A DNA stretch of 64,000 nt from Asterias rubens (lineage: Eukaryota): NCBI RefSeq assembly GCF_902459465.1, contig NC_047062.1, forward strand, positions 23,994,001-24,058,000, in the 5' to 3' direction. How positions within the stretch are numbered: the first letter of the stretch is position 1; every line of letters starts with the position of its first letter. Below the pieces are notes generated by a model that saw nothing but the letters and a program-made list of their open reading frames with translations, did not search any database and was not told the origin of the DNA. Position numbers and translations under genes: made by a program. This document shows, piece after piece, positions 39,537-58,700 of the stretch.

Positions 39537-40980
39537 AGCGTTACGCGGTTACAACCCTAAATTTGTATTAATTGGCAATCCCTCCCCGTCCAAGTTCGAA
39601 GTCCACTTGTAACAGGAGTTCGGTCTGGAAAACATTGAGCGAGGAATAGAAAAACAAGTCACCATAAAACTACTGTCTTTTCCCTTTTGTCCACATTACC
39701 AGTAATATGGGAAGGGGGGGGGGGCAATATAAGAACAAAGTCTTGGTTAGCGTCAAATGTGAACAGTTGCTATGGTAATCGCCGGTTGCTACACAAAGAC
39801 CGAATAACACTTCGACAAAGGGATCTTCTATTTTTGGTTGGGAAAATGGACGAACCCAAAGGCAAATCAACTTCAAGTACCTCGTAAAACGCACTACTGT
39901 CATTCGTGGTGACTCGTGTTCAATGAAAGTAGTCTTGAAAATCATACCAACAATATCAACAAAATCAATTTTCACAACGCTCCTATCTTTGAAGATGACA
40001 TTGCTTGGAATGATGGGGCTTCTTGGGTCACTGATTCTAGTATTGTCCGAGAATTGCTCCCCCACCGCCGGATGTTGCCCCCCTATGTGGCAACCATGGG
40101 GTAACTCGTGTTATCGTCTCACCCCTGAAGGAGCACCATGGAAGTCATCCCGATCAACCTGTTGGGATATGGGAGGCAAGATGCTCGCCCCACGCTCGAT
40201 CCAAGAAAATGATCTCCTTGTACGCATGAGACCAAATCAGCCTGATTATCGCGGAAAGTATGGCACTTGAGAGGGTGCCGTTTCTCACAATGTTTTATAC
40301 CATCAATCTCTCCCTATTACTTGTCACAAAGAAAGGTTTTATGCTAACAACTATTTTGAGTAATTACCAATAGTGTCCACTGCCTTTAAGCTGATAACAT
40401 CGTCTACTTGTTTTAGAAAACAGCAAATGTCAAGATCACACGAAAATCAAATCCATCCACGTTTAGCGATGTGGCGGCGAGTACACAACGTGTCTATGAC
40501 CGTATCATTCGCGAACGGACATCAGCCTACGAATATCTCAGAAACGATTCATGCATGAACCGTTTCTCATAATTCAAATGTTTTTGGGTAAACATTTTCA
40601 AAACAATTTTACTTAAAAGAGAACCAACACTCAATAATTATACTACACAATACGTCAATGATTATACACCGCTAAAATTGAGGTCGAAGATGGATAATTT
40701 AGAATAATAACCACACATGCTTTAACTGGCTGATAGTTCTGAAACATGAACTATAATTGCTTGATATTAAGAAAATGCATCGGCGGGCGTTTTTTTTTTC
40801 TTCGTTAGACTGAGTCTGTCACAGTGATGGATTGACTGTGTTTTCCCTGCTATGGGTTGTGTTTTGAGAAAAGAGAAAGCAATTTGCTGACAGTTAACCG
40901 AAACAATGGTGGCATATACATGTACACCGCTACACAAAAACAGGAAGCACACATGACACATCAATGCGATCAATAGGGAG
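39537..40980 (+). repeat. Segmental duplicate of ~20583-26055 with an internal ~4-kb deletion
   Basis: 39537-40256 matches 20583-21325, and 40252-~40980 matches 25355-~26055. Confidence 0.93.
39923..40270 (+). pseudogene. Truncated third lectin copy (leader plus first half of CTLD) fused to a MITE A fragment
   Basis: Near-identical to lectin 1 up to QPDYRG, then reads KYGT* from MITE sequence; it lacks EPN and the PAN domain. Confidence 0.9.
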
Positions 40981-41576: not shown

Positions 41577-42500
41577 AGCAAGCCCCATGAGAAACAAATT
41601 CAGGCTTTAACGAAAATTAAAGCAATCTTCTCAGATGGGAAAGAGTAACAAACTGCCAACAGAAATAAACCCTTTTCAGATATAAATCGACGTAAAATAT
41701 CGTCACATGTGTTGGGTCGTAAGGGAGGGGAGGCGGGCATCTCAAAAAGCCTTCTGGAGTTCTATCTAAAGGAAATCTTGAATCGATCATATATATCTAC
41801 CTTAACCCTTTACCCAAAAAAACGTTGCATGTCTGAGGAAGAAACATTACACCCCATCAGTCAAGACAAAGAAATGTGTTCAAGAAATATAGAACATCTG
41901 CTGCTAAAACAATGCAGCCAACTCAACCTACATTCTTACACCTGTAACTGCATTGATTGGTAGTAATGAATTTGAAAGTCAGATATACCGTATGTCTGGA
42001 AATATGAAGGGGTTTAAATGTCAGGGGTTTTATTCTTTACTTATGGGAAGGCGAGAAACATTCCAGAACATTACACTTTACAATACAACGACCCACGATA
42101 AATACTTCTCTCATATCAATTGGATGACTCGCTTGGCAACGGGCCTATCCGCATCATATCATACGGACAGAATTCTAGCATTACGACACACCAACACAAA
42201 TCTATCAGACTGTCATAAACAGATAAACTTGAAGAATGTTATCATTTCGCCTCAACTGCGCGGGATAACTTGACGAGAAAAGCAAACACTGCTGGTTGTC
42301 TGACTTGGTGGAGACTTTGGGTGTACAGTCTGGTTGTAAAAGGGCCTACTAGCTGACCCAACCCCACTGTATTTCAATAACAATGTCATGCCGATTGCAC
42401 AGTGAGTGCTAAACGATCTTACCAGTTATCAACTCGGCTAGTCTTGACGACAGTTTTATATTAGTCATCTTTGGAGTACGGAGGGATTTTTTTCTTTAAG

Positions 42501-45500
42501 ATGATGGAAGTGATGCAGCCATCAACTCCTGAGATTTACATTGAGCAGGAGGATAATAAAGGAGATGGCGGCCATCGTATGGAGGTAGATGAAGGCGAAT
42601 ATGAAGAAGTTGGCAGAGCTTTAATCAGGTAATCATAGAATATTATTGTTAATATTGTTAATTTTTGTTTATTCAATTTCTATTCTATTGAAACTCACAT
42701 TTATTTTCAAACTTCATTATTTTTTTAAAAATAATATTGAATAACAAAACAAAAAGTCAAAAAAAAAAATAAGGGGCCTATCCACAAATCCAGATGGTCT
42801 CAAGGCATCCTCTAGAACCGAAGCTTGTGGTTAGATGCCTGATGTACATTCAAACAGACAAGAAACAATACGGGCAGATAGGTTGAACAAAGACAGATTA
42901 ATAATGTAAAACAAGTATGAACTATTTAATTCCGAAACTTACTTAATGTATTTATGAACTGAGGGGCAACATATTCAGAACTTTTAAAGTTTGGATTGAT
43001 ATTTCGTACATAAAAACGTCAATATTCCACTCGACGGTTAACAATCAATGTTAATCAAGTTGTGAAATGTTATGATAACGTGTAAGAAGAAGTAAACATT
43101 TGAAACATCTGGACAAGTCAATTCAATGTTGTTTGAATATTTAACAGATAAGCGTTTGAAAAGTACATTCTCAACTTACATTTCCCCCAATGAAAGTGTG
43201 TTACCTTCACTAAATGAATTAAATACTTTTAGACTGACTGGTTTCTGTAATAAATATCAAGAAACCCTTTTATAGGACTGGATACAACAACTTATTAATG
43301 TTACTCATCTCTTTTATTTAAGGTACAAATGCATTTATTTGAAGAAGAAAAACAAATTGGCGTTAATGGTCGGTGTCTACTGTGTAGAAAAATTACTATT
43401 AAAAATGACAATAGCGTTGCCATGACAATAACAATGAATGGGACAAGAAGGGAGTTCATTAACTGACAAGGAAGGTGTCGTTAAATGAAGGTTGGGGCAA
43501 TGTTTATGAACTAATTGGTAGCTATAAACCATTTTGCTTTAGTTTCGTTTATTTAGGTCATTATTTCATTTACACATGAAGCCATTTCTACAGTTGGTAT
43601 ATGAAATCGAACATTATAAATAAACACTGTGAAATGCCTTGAATGAATTCCAAGACGTTAAGACGCGTATCACTGGTTAGTTATTACAACAATGTGACGA
43701 ATGCGCAGAGAGCGATAGAACAACCCTGTGTGCTCTGCTGCTATGGGCCGTGCACCCTGCACGAGTAATGCCATAACTGGCACAGCCGTAGGGGATCACA
43801 TTCCCACATTAATATTATCATCGTCAACGGCTTGGTATCTCTAAGTTAAGTTGGTATTACGGATTGCATAAATAAAACAATAAGACTTTTTTTTTCTGTC
43901 AGTAAGATAATAAGTGGCAATCGACAACAAGGTATGCATATTAATGAGGGCATTAATTGAATTGGTAAAATATTGCCATTGGTATATATAGGCCTATAGG
44001 TATACACTCATAAGGTATTCGAAACCATGCCATAGAGCTATATAATAAGCTTTTATATAGCTCTATGAACCATGCACATGACCCTTAAAAATAAAGCAGT
44101 CGAATGCTGGTCTCCCTATCAACACGTACGCACATTCCCTACGAGTACTAATGTTGTCTACATTAACTGTTGCCCTGGTATCCCCTAATTCTTAAAATTA
44201 TAACTCACTCTGTGATCTGAATGGTTAACGATGTCAGAATGTTTTATTAATTGTTCTTATTGAGAGGGGGGCGGCACGGGCGGGCGGGTGTTCTTGGGGG
44301 GGGGGGGGGCTTCTGCCCAAACCCTTCTGGTTACGCCACTAGGTAGGACAATTCATCTTCAACTCAAAGTGCATTAATGTTCAGACTGATCCCGGGCTGT
44401 CATGCAAAGATGTCGTTCAGATTAATGCCAGCCCCATAGACATTTGCTATTAGCAATGACCAACGTAGTCAACTAGGTAGTATCACTCAAATGCAACAGC
44501 TGCGATTTATTATTACAATTCGTGACTATGGAAATGTTCTATCTGATAGTCTTATGTTCACATAAGACATTAACTTGTCGCAGAATGATTGTTTCACCGA
44601 AACCCCGCGCCGTCCACTTTTAATTTCTTTAAATAGTTATGACTGTGATGTGGCCGTGGACAAGTGCCGAGCAAAACATAATATGACTGACTGGCATTAT
44701 GAAAGTATTGCCAAGGTACGCCGAGAATAATGTTCATCTAGAAAAAATGGTAGGAGGGACGGGTGGGGACAATGGGGAAACTAGGCTGATTCTCTGTCTT
44801 ATAAATCCGCAAAAATAAAAACAGGCCCTAATATCATTGGCAACAATTATCTCATTTGATAAAATGTTCTGTGACGTAAGCTTTCAATCATTATAGCTGT
44901 GTTCATGGTCAAGGTATTGCACTTTCGATCGTCTGCATGCAACGTATGCACAATGTTGTGTACATCATTGATGTGTTTAAACTGCGACTCTCCCGTGTGA
45001 AATGTATACAAGGTCAAAGGTACATTTGGCAACATCCGGTAAAACTGGTATCTGGCATTATTCGTGAACCTCGAGGTGTGACGTCGGATGCTCAGTAGGC
45101 TATAGGGGCAGTAATGAGGAGAGGGGAAGTGTCAAGGTCGTCAATTCGAAATGAATAAGTTTCTGTTTTCCTTCCTAAAAGGGGCACCTTTAAAACACAA
45201 ACACTCAGTTTAAAACACATCAGACTCCAGTATCCGAACTTCACACTTCCAAAGAGTGTACGAGACTTTGAAGTACGAGACTTTGAAGCAATTAGCGTTC
45301 TCATCGCTCATACTGTGCTCGTAAGCAGCCCCAAAGAATCATTGGTACATGTCTTTAATCATTCACCACCGGGGATGTAAAGTGAACTTGAGTAACTGTC
45401 CACAACCTCCGCTGACCCCTTATAGTACCTCAATAAAAACAGCAGCCAATTACATGACATCAAAGGTGAGTGCTTTAATCAAACTGGCCGGACGAACCCC

Positions 45501-48500
45501 TCTGGAATCTGTTTAACATCTCAAGAAAGCCCACATGTAAAGTGTTTTTATCGGAGGGAGGGTGAGGCTGATCTTACAGACGCATGAAGACAGTTTGATT
45601 ATTTTAGTAAGATCCAAGGCAGGCAGCATTAGTATCAGACTGTACATGAACAGCATGATACGGATAGCCAAGGCGTCTTATTGGTGGGGTTTTACATCCT
45701 TATGACGCCTGAGGCAGTCTTGAGACGTATGGATTCAAGAGTGCTGGAAGTTTAGCTGTTAAGACCAAAGTAGTCACTATGTGAAATTTCTTTTTGGAGT
45801 TGCTGGTATAATTTGAATAAAAACGGAGAAAGTTTTTTGAGAAGAAGATGGCCAGTAATGCTTTGGGTCGTCGGTTTACCATGGATTTTAATTATTTGGA
45901 TATGGTGTGGCCGACTGGAACGAAGATAACAGTACGGGCTGGTGATTGTCAGCCTGTCACTGTGCTGAATTCACAATCTCGACTCTTGGCTCATGAAAAG
46001 AGAGACAAAATTGGGTGAGTTCAGTGTAAGCTTCTATGCAAAATTCGGAGATGAGTTTCATCTTCATCCGCCTTTATAATTATTCTGGAGGCCTCGTTTT
46101 TTTTGCAGTCGAAATTGTATTCAAACATTCGGTTCATTATATGGTCAAAAATAACTCATCAATATTGACAAAGATGTCAATTTGTGTAACACTATAGTCC
46201 GCATAATGGGCAGCAGACGGTCCCCATTTTCAATTTCTCAAAAAAATTAGTCATGATCTTTCGCATTGAGTGATGACATTCGAAGCAGACAAAAATTTTC
46301 TTCATGCCTCATGTTTGAAGTACACAGTGTTGTTCCGTTGTTTCTTTAAAGTGTTATAAACTATACGGACAGTATTCAAACTAATTCCACAGCCGTAAAC
46401 GTCCAGATGGTCCAGGCGGGGCTTCACAATGCACCAAAAGAAGGGAGTGGAAGGAAAGATACGGTGGCAACATAAAGAGTGCACCAAGCCTCACCATCTC
46501 TATCTTGTGCGGATATTATGGCATATTATTACCACAGTGCCAGCACGGCCACCAGATGCTTTACACAAGGACGCGTTATAAGAAACCCGCTCAGGAATCT
46601 CCCAAGAGTTAACGATGAAACCCCGAGTGTTTTCTCTTCATCTAATGATGTCAATGACCTCAGGGGTTTGCCCTCATTATAACAGACGGGATGTTCTGCA
46701 AATATCACATGAGTGTTAACGGACAAGTCACTGGCCTAATTCCCAATGGTTCATGTTATCATGTCAGACGAAGGCAGACAATAATTACTCATTCAAGTGA
46801 TGAACACGATATTGCACAAGACATCAACGAGATGATGTGTTGATATTGAGCTCCTGGTATCATTTGAAGACTTTGGTTTGCAGAGAAACGGATGCAAAAC
46901 GATTATTTCAATCCAAACAGTAATAACGAAGAAAAAGAAGTTAATAGTACAACAAGTTGCTCAACTCGAAATGAAACAGTGGTACGACATAAATTCTTTG
47001 AATAACTTTAATACATCTTGTGGCCTCGACAATCTACCTGGATGGTTGCAGGCTTGACCACAGTTGCTTCTCTGAACACATGTGTATAAAATGGAAAATA
47101 CCAGGGGAGCAGAACAAAAATTTTGAAAGAAATGTTTTGGTTCTGTTGACCAGGGGTAATAAAGGGTTATACAGCGCCCTCATGGGATGGGTGGTATAAA
47201 AGTACTTAATACCCGATGTTAAAAACTATCATTCTATGATTTCTTTCAGTGGTTTGAACCCCGTGGATTCGGTGATCTTAACGGCTGACAGAGGCTACCT
47301 TCTATGGACCAATCCAAGAGGATCCATTGAGGTCAAATTCAAATACGGTCGCTCGGGGGAAGATTTCAAGTAAGAGCACAATGGGGCACACTATACGAAT
47401 ATCGGTTAATTACAAACTAGGCCACAGTTGTTTTATGTTCAATATTTTGTTGATAGGCTAGTTGTAACTATGAGGCGATAATCCGCACATCTCTTTCATC
47501 TTAAACTTAAAGAACATTTCACGGTAGGCCCTATGTGCATGCATACAGGCCTACGACTGACAACTATTGTGGTAATTGGAATATATCTATAACTTTAAAT
47601 TATTCAAAGAAATATTTTACTATTTTTATAACAAATATTTGTTCTATTCTGATGCAAGTGATGTCCGTGAGAGTTTAAACACGACTGTGCCATCTATTAG
47701 TTCTAATAGGTATGCAGTGGTGGTCTACAGACCACCTATTGTGGACGCGTCTTGAGCTATGCCATCCTACTGCTTAGGAATATGTATTGACTGCGAATAA
47801 TATTATGAGGTTATTACAGGACAAGCTCAATTTATAAACTTGACATTGCAAAACTTCACAGATACACAGCGTCAAGAATTTGCATGGAAAGAAGTTTTTT
47901 TCATAAGTGGAAAAAGGGGTTAAGTGCATGCATGGATGGGAAATTTTTGGGACGCTTGGTGGCAGCAGACTTTCCAGGTAAAATCCATTGTTTTGGTAAT
48001 GTACGCATGCTCAGAACTACGTAAACAATGGAAATTTACCTGGTAAGTCTGCTGCCACCTAGCGGTCCAAAGTCTCCCATTGGTTACTTGATGTTTAAAA
48101 CTCGTGTCTATATTCTATAGCACCTGTAACACGACAGGTTTCCGGTTTTAGGTAGTTTGTAGTATAACTGCTAATATTTAGCACACATAAAGGAATACAA
48201 TCACGAGGCACTATTCTTCTCAACTTTCCTCATCATATCAGCCTCGTCAAGGGAAATTTCATAAATTCAGGTGATCCCATTTAATGAAAAACAATTACGG
48301 GAAAAAATTGTCATATTTTGTAAGGGATTTCTTACACGTTAGGACCATGTCCCACGAGGCAATTTACAGGCAACCGGTTCCAGGCAATCTCCAAGAAGAA
48401 GAAGCATTCTCATATGATTTTTCACATAGCTTTCTTGGGGATGGTAAGACACCGTTTGTAAAATCACTCATGTGCTATTAAAGTAATCCCGTATACGCAC

Positions 48501-49669
48501 TGAAGTTGGTTGCCTCCAAGTTGCCTGTAAAAGTTGTCTCGTGTGACAGTGCCCTTAGATCGTGATTTATGTCGATTGAGGCAATCAAATTAAGCGATGG
48601 TAAATATTGTGGCCTTCAATTGCTATTCGACTTCTACATCTTTGGGGCGGACTTTTACTCTGGAGGATTGATAACGATTTTAACTGTATAACCAGTGAGT
48701 TTTCAGGATGAAGCATAACATTGTTTCTACTCATCAATATTTTGTACTTGGTCTGGAAGTACATTTTTACTGCATAACCCCAAACGAAGGACCAAGCCTT
48801 GTGTCTCACGCAATAGCTTCGCGAAATGGCGCAAAGCTATACATTATTTAAATGTTCACGTGCTCCATATGCAAACATAACAAACACATTCGACATATTT
48901 GCTGAAAGGATTATTGTTTCGTAGGACGGCAGTGAAATTCTATTTTTCAATATGAAAATACAAGTGAAATGCCATCATGGTATAATTATGGTAAAAGTGA
49001 ATGAGGTGATTTTAAACATGATTTGCATTTGAGATCGTATAGAAAACAGTCATTTGAAAAGGAGTGTACACCATTGTAAATGATACAAACATTTGCATAT
49101 AAACTTCATTGATGACAACATTTGCATATTAACTTCAATGCTTGAAAAAATGCCATGAAAACAACCATCATGAGAGCTTATTGTTCTGAAAGAAGTTACT
49201 CTTATAAAATAAAATAAAAGGCAGTATGCGATATCCAATTTAATTGTATAGATTTAAGCATTGTAAATGTTTAATTTCTAAAGATTTGTAGATGTTTTTT
49301 AGCATCAATCGATTACAAAAATATATGCCTCTTTTGATAATCCTGTTCAGCAGCAGTTGGACCTGTGCTAATGAATGATTCATTTTTCTTTCTCACTCCT
49401 AACCAATCAGCTGCTTCATCGACCCCCAGCACCAGGGCATCATGATCTATGAAATGCGTGGTAACTACCAGAAGGAGTTAGTTGTTGACGGTCGTCAACC
49501 AATCTCTAAAAATACCAACCCACATCATCTCAAATCAATGGGAGTTCGTCGTGGGGAGAACAACTTTGAATTCCGCTCAAAGAAAAGCGAAGTGAGGCTT
49601 GTGTTGGAGACGGTGCGAGACATGCCAGCGCTCCAGGCGTTCAAGTTCAACTATGTGCTAACATTGTAA
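42501..49669 (+). CDS. Unrecognised 3-exon gene, 168 aa; exons 42501-42628, 47250-47369, 49411-49669
   Basis: Each exon has a pyrimidine-rich acceptor, and the donors are gtaatc and gtaaga. Phases 2/2 join into one stop-free 507-nt frame ending TAA: MMEVMQPSTPEIYIEQEDNKGDGGHRMEVDEGEYEEVGRALISGLNPVDSVILTADRGYLLWTNPRGSIEVKFKYGRSGEDFNCFIDPQHQGIMIYEMRG...FEFRSKKSEVRLVLETVRDMPALQAFKFNYVLTL. Confidence 0.8.
47936..48080. mobile_element. Palindromic MITE in intron 2 of the unrecognised gene
   Basis: Arms gggacgcttggtggcagcagact..ccaggtaaa / tttacctggtaagtctgctgccacctagcggtcc. Confidence 0.8.
48343..48557. mobile_element. MITE with ggcaac motifs; relative at ~53545-53760
   Basis: Shared ggcaacc.gttcc.ggcaatctcc and ggttgcctccaagttg.ctg.aaa; ends tc.cacgagg / ctcgtgtga. 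Confidence 0.65.
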
Positions 49670-51037
49670 CAGAGCCCCACTCTGCAGAATTCCAGATATT
49701 TATTATCAATTAATTTCACTACTGCTTAAAATTATTAATTTAAAATTTTTTAAACAAGCTAAGCTTATCAGTGACTTTAATATAAGTATTTAATTATCAT
49801 TACATTTAATAATATTAAAGGTGTAATATCCAGCTGGTTATGTCGCTTTGTACCTTCCGTGGTTAGAGCATCAACTTCTAACCTTTGACATTATGATCAC
49901 ATGACTGCCATCATGATGATGTTGTTTTAGCGACCTCGCCTGCTCATATAAGAAGCACACTTGGTCTTCGCGGAGCAGTCAAAAGCCGATGCGTTCGTTT
50001 AATTATGTATGGGCATGTTTACTAAATAAGTTTTCGCTACAAACAATGTTTTTGGAAAAAGACTCTTTATTATTCGTTGCACAACAAACTTTGCCGTTCG
50101 ACGACCAAGAGGGCATAGTCTACCAAAACAAAATTTGTATAGACATTATAATAAACAGATAATTCATATAGAAAGATTTGCTAAAAAACATTTGATAATA
50201 AATATTTTAAATCAATAATATGTAATTAAACAAAACATTATTTCAAGACGCAAACTATCAGGACTGAACGAATTCCAAATTTAAAGCAGAAGGGGAGATG
50301 AAGTAGATGTACACCCCTAATGCCAAAAGGAAATACCCAAATAATATATTTAGCTATTTAGCAGCTAAAGGAACAACAGCATACTCTAATCAATTATTCA
50401 TGTAAAGACTTAGCCACTTCTTAAATATATTTAAAAAGAGATAAGGGATATATCCCTTGTTGGTTGTTGTTGTTTGGGTGAATCTCAAGTGTTTGAATGA
50501 AACGATGCCAAATTGTTCTTTGCAAATAAACTTTTGAAGTGTCACTTCAAATTTTCGCAACCTTTTTTGACTTACTACTATAACTACTAAGGATGTATAT
50601 GAATAATCCTTTTTGCACAATTATTTCAGTCGAACCACGCCCAGTTTTCCAGTTGAGAAGTGTTTGAATGAAATATCTGGACAATGCAAATGCCTTAAAA
50701 CACAACTAAAACAAGGTGACTAGTTGAGTATTGCATACTTCACTTTTAGATGTTAATTCTTCAGATTGATTTATATTAAATATATTTATTATAACTATGT
50801 ATAAAGTGTTATGTAGATAGATACATGCAATTTGCAAGAGCAATACACTTGTCCAAGTATCTAATCATGTAGAATGTAGAATGCATTTGCACAATATTAC
50901 ACCGGCTTACATTTGAAGCTCTGATAATGAGCTAATTCTTGCCGCACAGAAAAAAAGCATTAAAACAGTTGCATATTTGTGTTAATAATCCAAAGTAGTT
51001 ACCTGATTGTTGTTAGGAAAACATTTTTATTTAATTT

Positions 51038-51430
51038 TATAACACACCTATTGCTTGTTCTGTATTCTGGTTGGCTGAAACACGGTCACGTGGGGGGAAC
51101 TAATATAGTCTAGTGATCGCGCGCGCTTTTTTTGCGGGAACTAGTACCCGAGCGGGCACTAGTCTTTGAAAATAGTGCCCGGTTACAGCGCCCTCTCTTG
51201 ACTTGAACCGTGAACTACAAAACTTCCTTTCTTTTCCAGATTTCTGATTTATTTGACATTTAAGACCGGAGCTGTGTTATAAAACACCTATTGACTGGCA
51301 TAATTCGGTAACTAGTGTACGTCTATTCCCCCTTAGGCCTGTGAAAGACCAGAAGAGGGGCCTATTTCCCTCGGCCAAAGTCCCTTGGGGGAATAGATGT
51401 ACACTAGTTACCTCATTGCCATTCAATATG
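51038..51430. mobile_element. Element with terminal hairpin (51308-51412), related to the 19.6-kb palindrome
   Basis: Arms ggtaactagtgtacgtctattcccc / ggggaatagatgtacactagttacc; gtgttataaaaca..tattgactg matches the reverse complement of 19722-19747. Confidence 0.7.
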
Positions 51431-52165: not shown

Positions 52166-55100
52166 TTAAGATACATCCTTTTTCATCCAATATATTGGAC
52201 TCAATGTTGTGAAAGTGTTGAGTTTTAATGGTGGAGGAGGAGGTGGGGGAGGAACACTTACTAAAGTGTGGGATAAATTAGAAACACTTTGTACTTTATT
52301 ATCCCGTTGAACATCCACACGGTTATCTGAGGTTGCCTCCCTTCCTTCCAAACATCCACCATCTGGCTCAGAGAGCCTAACATCACTCACCCTAGGTTCT
52401 TGGGAGACGCTGGTGCAGCTGTTTGATGAACAAGGAGTCTGGTTCTCACAGGGCGGGCTGGGTGTAGTAGGTGAACAATCACAAGTCTCTAACATCTGTA
52501 CAAAATCAGAAGAACATTGAGATGGCATAATAAATCTTAAATGAATCAACACACAAATTTCTCCAATGGTTTACATGATCAGGAATGTTTCCTTCAAAAG
52601 AGTTATTCAGTATTACCAAACAATTCTTGCATATAACCCTTTTTTAAGGGTGGTTCATGTACATGTGTTATCATTGGTTTTGGGAAAAGTCCATAACAGG
52701 CACTTTGTGTCATTTAGCCTTCACAAAACAAATGATAAATCAAACAAGTGAAATAAAAATTTAAGGGTGTTCAAATACTTTGAGAAAAACTTACATTATG
52801 CTTTTGTGTTTAGAGTGTTGCAGTAACCTTGCAGGTGACATTTGGTTAGTGTAGCTTTCTCAACAATGAGAGCCATTCAAAAGGAAACTTTTCATATATG
52901 GTGACTGTTCTTGTTCAAGCTTTAAATTCATAGTGGAAAATTAATATTTTGAAAACAATCTGATAATGTTGTAAAATTTGTCATAATTGCTTGTCACTCC
53001 TCCAACTTTTCATGAATGAATGCTTATAAAGTTGTCTTTGGACAAGAATAATTGTTCACCTGAGCATTTAAGGTATTGACCGGTGAGCAGAACTCATATC
53101 CAAGATGAGAGTAGAAGCCCTGCTTGTCTTTAGTGTTAAGGAACATAGTGGTATAGCCTTGACTCTTAGCATGTGTTTCAGCCATCTCCATGACCTGTCG
53201 GCCGATACCTTTACCTCTCAGATGTTCTGGGACAACGACTGATAAAAGAAAGGGAAATTAACAAAAGTGATTTATACATATAGAATATAAGAACAGAAAA
53301 ATTGAATGCAAAATTTAACATCGACTTTGAGGAGTTTCCCTTATATGCAACAGCCAGTAAAAGTTTATCAATGCAAGCATCATCTTGCGTCCCCCCCCCC
53401 CCCACCCCCTCAACTAAATTAATTAATGGCAGTGCATTGCGGCCAATTATTTCTCGTCTAGTGTTGCCATACCATGCTGCTTTTGATGGATGAGGGATAG
53501 TTCCGTGCCAAAATGCCTTGGAATGTTGAAATTGTACTGGCCTAAAGGCCTTGTGACATGATGCCATTTTAAGGCAACCAGTTCCTGGCAATCTCCAAAA
53601 AGGAAATTCATTCACATTTCATTTTTTCGTTATTTTCCCGCTGGGAGTAATGAGTTACAACTAGAAGATTGTCTCTATTGCTGCCAAAGTGTTCCTTTTG
53701 CATAGAGTGCACTTGGTTGCCTCCAAGTTGACTGAAAAATTGCCCCTTGTGACAACACCTTTATATATTACATTCAAAGACAATTGAATCTTCAACAGTG
53801 TACTGCATTTTCATTGTCAATGTAATTTTCCTTCTTACCGGATTCAATGAGGACACTGCTTGGCATGCTGATGACTCTGACCAATCTGCAGTAACCAATT
53901 ACAGCTGGACTTGATCTACCCTGTTCATTAGCCACCATCACAAGTGAGTACGGAAGTTCATCACGTGACTTATCCAATGAGTGAAGTCTAAACATGTAAA
54001 AAAGTATAATAGATGTTAAATTTGCATCGGGGATAGAGAACATTAATTTTTTGTTTTTACCTACCCGCTGCCAAAACATAGGATTCGAACTGCCTCTAGC
54101 TACCGGGCAATCTCGGTAGTCTAATTGATAATACACTGCTCTAGAATTGCAAGGGTCGTGTGTTCTAATCCCACCCGAGTAAATGCCTGTGAGTGTGATA
54201 TTTTTTCAAAGGACTTGGGAAAGTCCAGTGCTAGTCCAGTGAGTATACAGTGCTAACACACATCGGTGTATGGGTAAAAACCAAAAGTTAATAAAAAAAA
54301 GTATTATAAACAATTTATTCATCATGTCAATCATGCAGGCCTGATACTTCTGCATCAAAATTATGCAGTCGACAAACATCACAACAACTTTTTGTAGAGA
54401 AACCAATGAAGAATCTTCATTTATAGCTAGACGTGGGAAGAAAACCCCTCGGGAGGGTAAAACCCGCGCAGTCAGGTACCGTAGGTATGAAAAACCCAAT
54501 CCTTATAAGCAAGGCTCCGATCCCAGCTCAAGCTGGGGTCCACAAAGGTGAAAGGCATGGAGAGAAACCACTAAGCCAACCTGACTGACCTCAACGTTGT
54601 TGTTGTATTAGCAAGGTAGTTTTCCTTTGTAAAGGGCACCTTCATAAGGAAACTTAAAGGCAACTAGGCAACTGCTTCCATCATGTCCATTAAGTATCAG
54701 GCCTGCTTCCTGGAGTAACTATATAGAATACACAGCCATAATTCACTCCACACAGCTACCTCTATATATATTCCCCATTGAAAAGAAACCAGAAAACAGG
54801 GCCATAGTGGAGTGGACCTGCTTTCTATGTACCTGTTTCCTTTATAATATTTCCATGAAAAATGTGTCTCAACATTCTTATGAGTGTACACATTTATAAG
54901 CAGAGATTCTATGCATTACTTATAAGCAATACTTGGCTGGAGCACTGGACAAGGTGAATAATACATCCAATACATTTATTTTCAGAATAAGTGGAAGTGA
55001 TATACATTGTACACTGACAAAACTATTAAAATTCAACATCAGTACGGTGGGTTTTATTATTCTCCCATGCTCTAAATCTAATCTTATTTCAAACAAGTAT

Positions 55101-55212
55101 CTTACCTTGCTGCTTTACTGCGAGGCCATTGAGCGTTAAGTAAGTCCGCACAATCATCAATTAAATCTGGTCTTCTGTGCAACGGTTCCATACGAATGTT
55201 TGAGATGTCCAT
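52166..55212 (-). CDS. NAA80: N-alpha-acetyltransferase 80 (actin N-terminal acetyltransferase), 254 aa; exons 55212-55106, 53987-53839, 53238-53060, 52495-52166
   Basis: EPLHRRPDLIDDCADLLNAQWPRS, RLHSL, GNAT motif A VVVPEHLRGKGIG, FYSHLGY, Pro8 tract and C-terminal PIYWMKKD. Phases 2/1/0 are consistent; the total is 765 nt. Confidence 0.93.
54063..54300 (+). mobile_element. SINE family B copy in an NAA80 intron
   Basis: Matches ~28700-28910; both A and B boxes are mutated here. Confidence 0.8.
54435..54590 (-). mobile_element. Degenerate tRNA-derived SINE fragment
   Basis: Minus strand ggttggcttagtggtt head and gggtttt...ggttttcttccc body, reminiscent of V-SINE-like cores. Confidence 0.4.
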
Positions 55213-55765: not shown

Positions 55766-58700
55766 ATGGCGGCGACAAGCAGTGATGAGAATGATGGACT
55801 TCCACCGAGATTATCAGCTCGTTTCGAAGGGTACAGTTGCGTTTCAAATATCAATACACTGTATATACTTTGGAGGTTTTGTTGGGATTACTTTTTCTCT
55901 TTAACTCAACTCAAGTCTTCAGTAAAAACAACTTCCGGGATGGGCGGGCCCAATTCCAAACAACAACAACAACAACAAGCCATTGCTTTAGTCAGCTCAG
56001 TTGAGTTACACCATAACTAGTAAAATGACTTGGAATTAGATGACATATTTTCAGTAGTACACTTACTATATAAAGCAACCTACTGTCAACCGCTGACTTA
56101 TTTAGTAACATTTTTTAAAGCCACGATCGATGATCATTGTGTAATTGTATGATGCCCTGGGGCCCATGCCCCCCCCCCCCCCCCCGCAAACCCCTCCACC
56201 GTTGCTGGGTCTTCCCTACAGTACTAATGTATCGAGGTCACTGGATACAATTCGCTTGTTGCAACAGTACAGTTTTTTTTAAGATCTCGATTAGACCAAC
56301 CGGGGACCTGTACCATCTCTATTTTAAATTCTGACTTTAAGAATCGGACCTAGGGCGACGATCTGTCATAGTCTTTAATTTCAACGGGAGGCCATCAGCT
56401 GTCAAATCAAAAAGAGGAGTACAGTACAGCATCCCATAGTTCAGTTGCGATAACCTAACCCTCCTCTTGATGGCCGGAAGGCCGGAGCCGGCCGTCGGGA
56501 GGAGAGTTACGTTATCGCAACTAAGCATCCCAGTGCTAGTTACTTGGTCTTAAGCTCTCCACCAGTAATGGTAACAATTCTGTCTTATTGTTGTTTTTCA
56601 CAGGTCGTTTGCATATCTCACAATCAAAGATCGCCTCCCTGTCATCACCACCAAAGTGGTAAACACTGTGTACACCTACCGCATTGAGGCTGCACAGCTA
56701 CATGGGCAGGTAAGAAAGACCCCAGACAGAACTTCTAGGTTTGTTCCGCTATCCTTACTCCACATGGAGGCGATAGTGTAACGAACCTCGCCATTGACTA
56801 TGTTATAGTTCTAGGATACTTCTAGAAACTATATAGTTTCTACAAATAGTTCTAGGAGTACCCAGGTAGTATCGTATGATAGCTGTTGGCTCTGAAATAT
56901 TGTACCAAACCCAAAGGCCAATGGAGGTTTGTCGTAGCATTCCGTCCCATCTACAGTTAGGACCAGTACGAACTTAAGTGTTACAGTTAGGACGGCCGAA
57001 ACTATAGCTTGGATGGCATGATAGAGATAGCGACATGCATGTTGTGATAAGACTTTAAAAAATGACACTCTATTCTGGAGTGATTTGCAATCCTCTTAAG
57101 TTTCTCTCGGCTGACAACGGGGCTCATGTGATAATGAAGAAATTCTAATGGCAATTCTTTTAAAAAAGAATATTGTTTCTAGCTCAAAATATATAGAGAA
57201 CCAGCACGCCTGAAGTTTTTTGGTTGTGAAGGTAACTCTTTTCTTTCATTGCTCTTTAATGTTTCTCAGGATGGAGCCACAGATTGCAAAGACATCGTCG
57301 CTAAACTCTCCAAATTCCGCAACGAGTTACAGACAGACAAGGCCATTCTCCCTCTGCAACCAGATGGAGAGGACGACATTGAGATCTGGGAGCGATGTCT
57401 GGAGGAGGAGACTAAGGCCAATGGGGGTACCCCTGCAAGCTGGTTCACATCTCCCTGGTTGTATGTGGAGTGTTACATGTATCGAAGGATTGTGAATATA
57501 ATAAGACAGAGGTACAACTTAATTTTGATCTTTTGACAATCAGTTAAAGCATATTACTGTGCCGTGCCATTAGATGGTGCGCAAATTGGACGGTTAAAAC
57601 TGAGCATCTTTATTTTTGTGACCTTGACTTGATCTGACTTAATAATAGTTCTGACTCAATAACAGTTTACTTTGTTTTCTTATCTCCTTAAAGCAATCAC
57701 CTGAGGAACTTTGATCCGTTCAGCGAGCAAAAAAAGGCAGCATTGAAGCAGTCACAGGAGGCCTTGGTCACCCTTGCAGAGTACCAAAAGATGACACATG
57801 GGAAGGACATTGACTGTTTTAAAGAATTCATGGAGGTAAGGGAAGAAGCAAAAGGTTGCGGGAAGGAAAGTTCTGACACAAATTATCAGAAGTAGACCAA
57901 TGTGCACCCACAGGTTAAATCTCCCTTAGAATTGTGTGTCAATGATGTCACTTAGTATTAGCTTGTGGGGACAGTGTGTTGTGACTGTAGACATCAAGGT
58001 CGTGTCTCTCATGTTCGGGGCCACATGCCTTTTACTAGAAGATTCTTCTCAGTCTACCTTCATGATGGACCCAACCTCTGGAATAAACTTCCAAATCACA
58101 TCAGGGCAACAACATCCTTCAACATGTTCAAGTCACTTCTGAAAGCCCACTTGTTTCAGGAGGCCTGTCATCAATGACTTATTTATTTCTTCTGTGCCTC
58201 AGCGCCTTTTTTAGCAAACCTTTGATTTGTGCGCTTTATAAGTTGATTATGATTGATTGATTAATTAGTTTGTTCATGTTTTGTTTCCATCCTCTTTCTT
58301 CTAGATTTCTCTTTGGGGAAATAGGTGCGACCTCTCCATCTCAGCCGGTGTAGAAAACTCACAGAAAATTAGCCCACTCGCACACATTGCAAATTTAAGA
58401 AACAAAATATTAGTTAACGACAGCGATAAGCTTTGGCGTGTCTTGCAAAACTCACGGGAGAGCAAAGCTGAGAATGAGGCAGTGAGGATGGACATCGTGT
58501 TAGACAATGCTGGCTTTGAGCTGTTTACTGATCTGTGTTTAGCCGAGTATGTCTTGAGAACCAACTTGGCTGACGTTATTGTTATGCATTACAAAGCAAT
58601 GCCATGGTTTGTATCGGATGTAGGACAGGATGACTTTACATACACATTAAACTACCTTGAACATCAAGAGAATGACAGCCTGAAAAAACTTGGCCGGTGT

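What the first reader, a model, noticed from the sequence alone, without database searches (positions are those of the whole stretch)
42501..49669. Hidden three-exon gene encoding a protein I cannot assign
Seen: two short exons absent from the ORF track (128 and 120 nt) splice in matching phase to the 49.4-kb ORF, giving 168 aa over introns of 4.6 and 2.0 kb. A likely 5' UTR donor (gtgagt) lies at 42402. The protein has an acidic, probably disordered N-terminus, no signal peptide, one Cys and alternating beta-strand patterns. Its end (FEFRSKKSEVRLVLET...FKFNY) recalls the last strands of a CUB fold. Inference: a cytosolic CUB-like or novel beta-sandwich protein, possibly lineage-restricted.
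Basis: partly seen in the sequence, partly recalled or inferred. Interest (0 to 1): 0.75.

Follow-up and report, generated by a model that had tools for sequence, protein, structure and literature searches.

The report
Starfish gene for leaderless CUB-like protein
The three proposed exons form a real, transcribed and conserved starfish gene that databases already list without a function; it encodes a small protein with no export signal, folded like the normally extracellular CUB domain of the signalling protein meteorin.

Summary
Observation confirmed. Exons 42501-42628, 47250-47369 and 49411-49669 (+) join in frame through GT/AG sites to give 168 aa. The first junction is present in RNA contigs and in raw RNA-seq reads. 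The window is Asterias rubens, and the gene is RefSeq LOC117299334, an "uncharacterized protein".

- The proposed 5'UTR donor at 42402 is not used. Transcripts run unspliced from about 42195 to 42628.
- An alternative first coding exon (45848-46014) lies inside "intron 1". It gives the 181-aa isoform X1, whose N-terminus is conserved across echinoderm classes and a hemichordate.

AlphaFold models of both isoforms match CUB domains. The best match is the solved N-terminal CUB domain of mouse meteorin (Z 12.6, 110 of 118 residues, 17% identity), clearly above other CUBs (Z about 8). There is no Pfam or PDB sequence hit, no signal peptide, and only one conserved cysteine.

The family is not echinoderm-restricted. 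It also occurs in Saccoglossus, Lingula, Tubulanus and Argopecten, with the same intron positions. In four lineages an ARMT1-like gene lies within a few kb downstream. The domain is under strong purifying selection (dN/dS 0.04-0.07).

Most likely it is an intracellular binding module with interchangeable N-termini; that function is inferred, not shown. This is a new variant of a known fold in an already annotated, unstudied gene, of moderate interest.

The parts
42195..42628 (+). First exon of the X2 transcript. The 5'UTR runs from about 42195 to 42500 and holds three short uORFs. The coding part, 42501-42628, gives 42 codons plus 2 nt of an acidic N-terminus and ends in GRALI(S), which forms beta-strand 1.
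   Evidence: RNA contigs are collinear from 42195 (X1) and 42343 (X2) to 42628. An in-frame stop lies at 42462, and the uATGs at 42236, 42383 and 42388 give 5-10-codon ORFs. In the model, residues 39-43 form a strand.
42629..47249 (+). Intron 1 of the X2 transcript (4621 nt, GT..AG). It contains the alternative first exon.
   Evidence: The joint is seen in 2 RNA contigs and in 18 raw reads.
45848..46014 (+). Alternative first coding exon of isoform X1 (55 codons plus 2 nt, donor GTGAGT). Its transcription start is somewhere upstream, about 45700, and is not defined.
   Evidence: Joined to exons 2 and 3 it translates exactly to XP_033638749.1 (P0013). Only about 4 raw reads in X22 cover 45700-45900, and RNA runs hardly hold it. 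The peptide is conserved in Acanthaster, Patiria, Antedon, holothurians, sea urchins and Saccoglossus.
47250..47369 (+). Exon 2 (120 nt, phase 2 in and out). It encodes GLNPVD...LTADRGYLLWTNPRG...DF, the first strands of the CUB-like domain.
   Evidence: A 120-nt exon with the same phases is found in Patiria, Acanthaster and S. purpuratus. Exon breaks fall at the same positions in the protein in Saccoglossus, Lingula and Tubulanus.
47370..49410 (+). Intron 2 (2041 nt, GT..AG). It contains a high-copy inverted repeat at about 47945-48075.
   Evidence: The contig pieces end at 47369 and the records continue. The sequence is shown.
49411..49669 (+). Coding part of exon 3 (85 full codons plus stop). 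It encodes the rest of the domain and ends in FKFNYVLTL-COOH.
   Evidence: This piece alone finds the family. RNA runs hold it.
49670..51050 (+). 3'UTR, about 1.4 kb.
   Evidence: The contigs extend 1639 and 1670 nt beyond 47369. ATTAAA lies at 50959.

Best explanation
This is Asterias rubens LOC117299334, a real, expressed gene under purifying selection. It makes two proteins from alternative first exons. Isoform X1 (181 aa) starts from an exon inside intron 1.

Both isoforms share a roughly 130-residue C-terminal beta-sandwich of the CUB type. It is closest to the N-terminal domain of meteorin, but it has no signal peptide, no disulfide pairs and no detectable sequence similarity to CUB families.

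Inferred mechanism: the domain is an intracellular (cytosolic or nuclear) protein- or ligand-binding module. The changeable N-terminal part sets partners or regulation. That part is an acidic disordered tail in X2, a conserved roughly 50-aa extension in X1, and a 140-480-aa Ser/Arg-rich disordered region in the lophotrochozoan homologues.

Shown here: the gene structure, transcription, conservation and the fold class. Inferred: the location and the binding function.
For: Gene and splicing. The window-encoded X1 protein is identical to XP_033638749.1, and the X2 protein differs by 2 aa from the A. amurensis isoform X2.

Conserved structure: the exon structure is the same in three sea stars and a sea urchin, and the intron positions are the same in Saccoglossus, Lingula and Tubulanus.

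Selection: dN/dS for the shared domain is 0.041-0.066. For the X2 exon it is 0.06-0.32, and for the X1 exon 0.09-0.20.

Fold: the X2 model has pLDDT 77 and pTM 0.72, with the domain at 84-94. The X1 model has pLDDT 74.
- Meteorin CUB 7tl6_B scores Z 12.6, rmsd 2.6 A over 110 of 118 residues for X2, and Z 10.7 for X1. The next CUBs score about 8.5.
- Foldseek gives E 7.5e-7 against 7tl6.
- AlphaFold DB returns Meteorin-like proteins and the ESM Atlas returns the Meteorin_N family as best non-self matches.

No leader: the maximum 19-residue hydropathy is at most 1.07 in all 17 full-length members tested, and only one Cys is conserved.

Modular N-termini.
Against: No experiment or annotation gives a function; every homologue is named 'uncharacterized' or 'hypothetical', and no paper mentions the locus ids.

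The intracellular location rests only on the absence of a hydrophobic leader in a simple hydropathy scan. No dedicated predictor was run, and unconventional secretion is not excluded.

Fold similarity among small beta-sandwiches does not prove common descent or shared function. Bacterial collagen-binding, PliG and C-CPE domains also score Z 7-8.

RNA support for isoform X1 in Asterias is only about 4 reads.
Confidence: 0.6

Rival explanations
1. It is a secreted, meteorin-like extracellular ligand that leaves the cell without a classical signal peptide, or from an unannotated start that carries one.
For: The best structural match by a clear margin is meteorin's N-terminal CUB domain. The best non-self AlphaFold DB and Atlas matches are Meteorin-like proteins and the Meteorin_N family. 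CUB domains are otherwise extracellular (general knowledge).
Against: No hydrophobic leader is present in any of 17 full-length members from 4 phyla. In-frame stops lie upstream of both start codons (42462 and 45818), and the X2 transcript has no upstream coding exon. Only one Cys is conserved, so the disulfides typical of secreted CUBs are absent. There is no C-terminal second domain. The lophotrochozoan forms carry long Ser/Arg-rich disordered N-termini, which are typical of intracellular proteins.
Confidence: 0.12
2. The conserved polar residues (DRGY..W.NPRG, C-F-I-D-P-Q, a conserved His, R..ENNF) form a small-molecule or metal site. The domain would then be an enzyme or sensor rather than a protein-binding adaptor, possibly working with the neighbouring ARMT1-like damage-control phosphatase.
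For: An unusually high share of the invariant or near-invariant positions are polar. An ARMT1-like gene lies 1.7-5 kb downstream in Lingula, Saccoglossus, S. purpuratus and Acanthaster, and about 5.5 kb downstream in the window.
Against: No match to any enzyme family by sequence or by fold; the cupin match is only Z 5.7. The spatial clustering of the conserved residues could not be examined. Conserved gene order may be a historical remnant. Tubulanus lacks the ARMT1-like neighbour.
Confidence: 0.12
3. It is a chance concatenation of open frames, or a non-functional or lineage-restricted young gene.
For: The exons are short and no database family matches.
Against: There are spliced RNA reads. 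Orthologues at 56-60% identity occur across echinoderm classes and a hemichordate, and the domain is found in three lophotrochozoan phyla. Intron positions are conserved. dN/dS is about 0.05.
Confidence: 0.01

Closest known systems
Meteorin / Meteorin-like N-terminal CUB domain (PDB 7TL6; Pfam Meteorin_N PF27640 as named by the Atlas search)
   Same: It has the same beta-sandwich topology over nearly the whole domain: 110 of 118 residues, rmsd 2.6 A, Z 12.6. This match stands well above all other structures. It is also the best non-self match in AlphaFold DB and the ESM Atlas.
   Different: Identity is only 16-20%, and HMMER finds no sequence or profile hit. There is no signal peptide and no second, C-terminal domain; here the CUB-like domain is itself at the extreme C-terminus. 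One conserved Cys replaces the disulfide pairs. Meteorins are secreted factors (PMC12316458 mentions the signal-peptide exon; PMC13359822 and PMC11301845 call Metrnl secreted).
Canonical CUB domains (PF00431: spermadhesins, C1r/C1s/MASP, neuropilin, Kremen, cubilin, TSG-6)
   Same: The fold and size are the same (Z 7.5-8.8, 95-101 aligned residues).
   Different: There is no Pfam CUB hit at E up to 10. The four-cysteine pattern, the secretory leader and any extracellular mosaic context are all absent.
Bacterial jelly-roll binding domains (ColG/ColH collagen-binding domain, C-terminal domain of C. perfringens enterotoxin, PliG lysozyme inhibitor)
   Same: They have a similar small beta-sandwich (Z 6.6-8.1) and all are binding modules.
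   Different: Scores are lower, identity is 5-10%, and they come from unrelated taxa and contexts. They are probably only fold analogues.

Membership tests
CUB domain (Pfam PF00431) | Beta-sandwich of about 110 residues with CUB topology | tested here: met
   AF2 models of both isoforms align to many solved CUB domains at Z 7.5-12.6, rmsd 2.4-3.2 A, over 95-110 residues. Foldseek gives E 1e-3 to 7.5e-7. These are predicted models, not an experimental structure.
CUB domain (Pfam PF00431) | Sequence match to the family profile | tested here: not met
   hmmscan against Pfam-A found no CUB hit at E up to 10. This holds for the exon pieces, 7 full-length homologues and all 15 members of alignment A1.
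CUB domain (Pfam PF00431) | Four conserved cysteines forming two disulfides | tested here: not met
   Only one Cys is conserved in the domain (in DFxCFIDPQ). The window's X2 protein has a single Cys in total.
CUB domain (Pfam PF00431) | Extracellular or secretory context (signal peptide or membrane anchor) | tested here: not met
   A hydropathy scan of 17 full-length members gives a maximum 19-residue Kyte-Doolittle mean of at most 1.07 and shows no N-terminal hydrophobic core. In-frame stops lie upstream of both starts. No dedicated signal-peptide predictor was available.
CUB domain (Pfam PF00431) | Ca2+-binding acidic triad of ligand-binding CUBs (a subset only) | not tested
   This needs a residue-level structural superposition, and the model coordinates could not be inspected.
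Meteorin_N (PF27640) / meteorin family | Structural match to the solved meteorin N-terminal domain | tested here: met
   7tl6_B scores Z 12.6 (X2 model) and 10.7 (X1 model). It is the top hit in all four PDB searches.
Meteorin_N (PF27640) / meteorin family | Sequence or profile similarity to meteorins | tested here: inconclusive
   No Pfam hit was found, and 7TL6 was not found by the profile search of PDB sequences at E up to 10. It is not known whether the Pfam copy used holds PF27640. No meteorin sequences were available for a profile-profile comparison.
Meteorin_N (PF27640) / meteorin family | Signal peptide plus a C-terminal second (netrin-like) domain | tested here: not met
   There is no leader, and the CUB-like domain ends at the protein's C-terminus in every member.

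The most novel reading that the evidence does not exclude
The family is a previously unrecognised, ancient bilaterian, intracellular branch of the meteorin/CUB superfamily. It would be a leaderless, disulfide-free CUB domain used inside the cell. It has been kept next to the ARMT1-like damage-control phosphatase gene since before the protostome-deuterostome split, and was not found outside these five phyla. It would be among the very few CUB-type domains working in the cytosol or nucleus, and could point to the origin of meteorin's N-terminal domain.
Probability: 0.2. Interest if true: 0.6.

Novelty: new variant of a known kind. Interest (0 to 1): 0.4.

Why it matters
CUB domains are textbook extracellular modules. 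A conserved, leaderless, cysteine-poor CUB-type domain that most resembles meteorin's would widen the known contexts of the fold. It would also give a handle on the origin of the meteorin N-terminal domain.

The family is small, with one gene per genome. It is strongly constrained and present in several marine invertebrate phyla, and nothing has been published on it. It can be studied in sea urchin and sea star embryos.

The gene has an alternative first exon and no 5'UTR intron, and it is already in RefSeq.

Tried and rejected
- Pfam scans of the exon pieces, of 7 homologues and of all 15 alignment members gave nothing relevant.
- PDB sequence searches with exon 3 and with the family profile gave only chance hits, such as a His-tag region and SoxA.
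- The search for homologous proteins with exon 3 alone found nothing, because full-length kin are longer than its length window allows.
- ESM Atlas feature searches gave only weak, unrelated clusters: SET at 0.67 and prokaryotic hypotheticals at 0.58. I rejected these as noise.
I used P0001 (2 substitutions) and P0013 (exact X1) instead.
- I looked for an X2-type upstream exon in the S. purpuratus and Saccoglossus loci by tblastn and a motif-plus-donor scan. Nothing convincing turned up.
- The idea that the two alternative first exons are duplicates rests only on a shared xR-hydrophobic-hydrophobic..G ending. The X2 and crinoid X2 endings (GRALIS|G, GRLSVS|G) match the lophotrochozoan GRWVG(N/S)|G in spacing and intron position. 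I leave this as an idea.
- The coelacanth 'diacylglycerol kinase' AlphaFold DB hit was not followed up. Its rmsd is 9.8 A, and it is probably a gene-model fusion or a beta-sandwich analogue.
- A paper search for the locus ids found nothing.
- A paper search for the meteorin structure paper found nothing in the library.
Full report
**1. The observation**

Exon 42501-42628 is 128 nt and is preceded by ...tttctttaag. Exon 47250-47369 is 120 nt and exon 49411-49669 is 259 nt including TAA. The donors are GTAATC and GTAAGA, and all acceptors are AG. The joined ORF is 507 nt and encodes 168 aa. The introns are 4621 and 2041 nt.

**2. Transcription**

RNA-type runs of two closely related organisms hold exon 3 and its downstream sequence. 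I used the single read-laying run on 42000-47999 because the 5' part was the least certain.

- The joint 42628>47250 (GT..AG, skips 4621) is present in one assembled RNA contig each of X1 and X2. It is also in raw RNA-seq reads: 14 reads from 12 start points in X22 and 4 reads in X23.
- The contigs are collinear with the genome from 42195 (X1) or 42343 (X2) to 42628. The first exon is about 434 nt with a 306-nt leader.
- That leader has an in-frame stop at 42462 and three uATGs opening 5-10-codon ORFs. No coding exon lies upstream.
- Both contigs stop on the laid stretch exactly at 47369 and run on for 1639 and 1670 nt. This fits exon 3 plus a roughly 1.4-kb 3'UTR. It supports the second junction indirectly but does not show it.

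**3. Identity of the gene**

An exhaustive phmmer search with exon 3 and two word-indexed searches identify the gene.

- P0001 is a 168-aa 'uncharacterized protein isoform X2' of Asterias amurensis. It differs from the window's protein at two residues, K20E and L123I.
- P0013 is XP_033638749.1, 'LOC117299334 isoform X1 [Asterias rubens]', 181 aa. It shares exons 2 and 3 but starts with a different peptide.
- That peptide is the ORF at 45848... With a GTGAGT donor after 46014, the joined CDS translates to P0013 exactly.

The window is therefore A. rubens, and the gene is annotated but unnamed. In the RNA sampled here that exon is barely used: about 4 reads in X22 and almost no words in RNA runs.

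**4. Conservation**

Orthologues are present in:
- Acanthaster and Patiria, each with X1 and X2 isoforms;
- the crinoid Antedon, with X1 and a short X2;
- two holothurians and two sea urchins;
- the hemichordate Saccoglossus.

Identity to the A. rubens protein is 49-81%.

The same roughly 125-aa domain, always at the extreme C-terminus, ends longer proteins of Tubulanus (268 aa), Argopecten (442 aa) and Lingula (611 aa). Their N-terminal parts are Ser/Arg-rich and match no Pfam family.

Exon mapping on fetched loci shows a conserved structure. Patiria, Acanthaster and S. purpuratus have the same 120-nt middle exon, a 259- or 265-nt last exon, and the same phases. The two intron positions recur in Saccoglossus, Lingula and Tubulanus.

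Nei-Gojobori estimates give the following dN/dS values:

| Region | dN/dS | Note |
|---|---|---|
| Shared domain | 0.041-0.066 | Patiria vs Acanthaster: dS 0.65, unsaturated |
| X2 exon | 0.06-0.32 | |
| X1 exon | 0.09-0.20 | |

Comparisons with A. rubens are near synonymous saturation, so the 0.041 estimate (dS 2.29) is rough.

An ARMT1-like gene lies 1.7-5 kb downstream in Lingula, Saccoglossus, S. purpuratus and Acanthaster. In A. rubens a GNAT gene lies at about 53.0-55.2 kb (-) and ARMT1-like exons at about 56.6 kb (+). This linkage predates the protostome-deuterostome split.

Nothing was found in vertebrates, arthropods or cnidarians. The searches have limited reach, so this is absence of evidence only.

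**5. Fold**

No Pfam or PDB sequence match exists.

The AlphaFold2 model of X1, built on a 15-sequence alignment, has pLDDT 74, with the domain at 80-90. The model of X2, built on 21 sequences, has pLDDT 77 and pTM 0.72. Its residues 1-34 are below 50 and its domain is at 84-94.

All structure searches agree:
- Foldseek against PDB puts the murine meteorin N-terminal CUB domain (7TL6) first, at E 1.8e-5 for X1 and 7.5e-7 for X2. Spermadhesins, collagen-binding domains, neuropilin, C1r and Kremen CUBs follow.
- The Foldseek-independent aligner gives 7tl6_B Z 10.7 for X1. For X2 it gives Z 12.6 over 110 of 118 residues, rmsd 2.6 A, 17% identity. The next entries score 8.5-8.8, which is the noise ceiling stated by the tool.
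- In AlphaFold DB clusters and Swiss-Prot models, Meteorin and Meteorin-like proteins are the best or near-best non-self matches. The ESM Atlas gives a Meteorin_N cluster first.

In the X2 model the end of exon 1 (RALIS) forms the first strand. The lophotrochozoan proteins have GRWVG(N/S) at the same place, immediately before the same intron.

**6. What it is not**

It is not a canonical CUB. It has no profile match, one conserved Cys instead of four, and no leader or membrane segment in any of 17 full-length members. It is not a meteorin either, because it lacks both the signal peptide and a second domain.

Whether it shares ancestry with meteorin's N-domain could not be tested.

**7. Most likely mechanism (inferred)**

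I read it as a soluble intracellular binding module. Its conserved, largely polar motifs are DRGYLLWxNPRG, CFIDPQ, a loop His, RxENNFEF and the C-terminal FKxNYxL(A/T)L. These would form a partner or ligand site.

Alternative promoters supply different N-termini: an acidic disordered tail, or a conserved roughly 50-aa extension. The lophotrochozoan versions hang the same module on long disordered regions.

The rivals are unconventional secretion as a meteorin-like factor, a small-molecule or metal site linked functionally to ARMT1, and a chance ORF. I give them 0.12, 0.12 and 0.01.

**8. Novelty and verdict**

The gene is already in RefSeq, so it is not hidden from databases. Nothing is published on it, and no family or fold is assigned to it in the libraries searched. 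A leaderless, disulfide-free, meteorin-like CUB domain conserved across several phyla is a new variant of a known kind. Interest is moderate, at 0.4.

Noticed in passing
window 47945-48075 (intron 2): A near-perfect inverted repeat of about 45-nt arms (gggacgcttggtggcagcagactttccaggtaaa... and its complement) around a roughly 40-nt loop. RNA contig depth over 47945-47992 is enormous: a bin mean (47800-47999) of up to about 79,000 and summed per-site depth up to about 448,000. There are many 'opposite strands' joints and hundreds of differing loose ends. It is therefore a very high-copy, transcribed foldback or MITE-like repeat. ARAGORN finds no tRNA.
   Followed up: partly
window 53051-55200 (-) and 56571-56718 (+); loci L002, L003, L004, L005: A GNAT acetyltransferase gene and an ARMT1-like (PF01937) gene lie just downstream. 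ARMT1-like is the near neighbour of this gene in Lingula, Saccoglossus, S. purpuratus, Acanthaster and A. rubens, but not in Tubulanus. This is microsynteny conserved between protostomes and deuterostomes.
   Followed up: partly
window 42558: The reference has A (Lys20, AAA). All four RNA data sets, including both runs of the organism that best matches the window, read G (Glu20), as in the A. amurensis protein. The reference allele is probably a polymorphism of the sequenced individual.
   Followed up: partly
window 44800-45199 (intron 1): Low-depth RNA contigs (depth 2-5) in X1 and X2 show a 56-58-nt skip with non-canonical AC..TG ends. This is probably a dispersed repeat variant rather than an exon.
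   Followed up: no
window 42236, 42383, 42388: There are three upstream ATGs in the 306-nt 5'UTR of the X2 transcript. They open 10-, 9- and 5-codon uORFs, so translational control is possible.
   Followed up: no
L003 10001-10221 (S. purpuratus first exon): The sea urchin's single annotated first exon starts with an acidic stretch (MKMPEEAEQEEQPEMEAC) and continues into the X1-type conserved region. It thus combines features that sea stars split between two alternative exons. No separate X2-type exon was found in the urchin or Saccoglossus loci.
   Followed up: partly
window 39923-40270 (+): An ORF carries a C-type-lectin-like start (CCPPMWQPWGNSCYRL), in line with the lectin gene cluster noted upstream in this window. 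In Patiria and Acanthaster the upstream neighbour is instead a NUP155-like nucleoporin gene, which is absent from the window.
   Followed up: no
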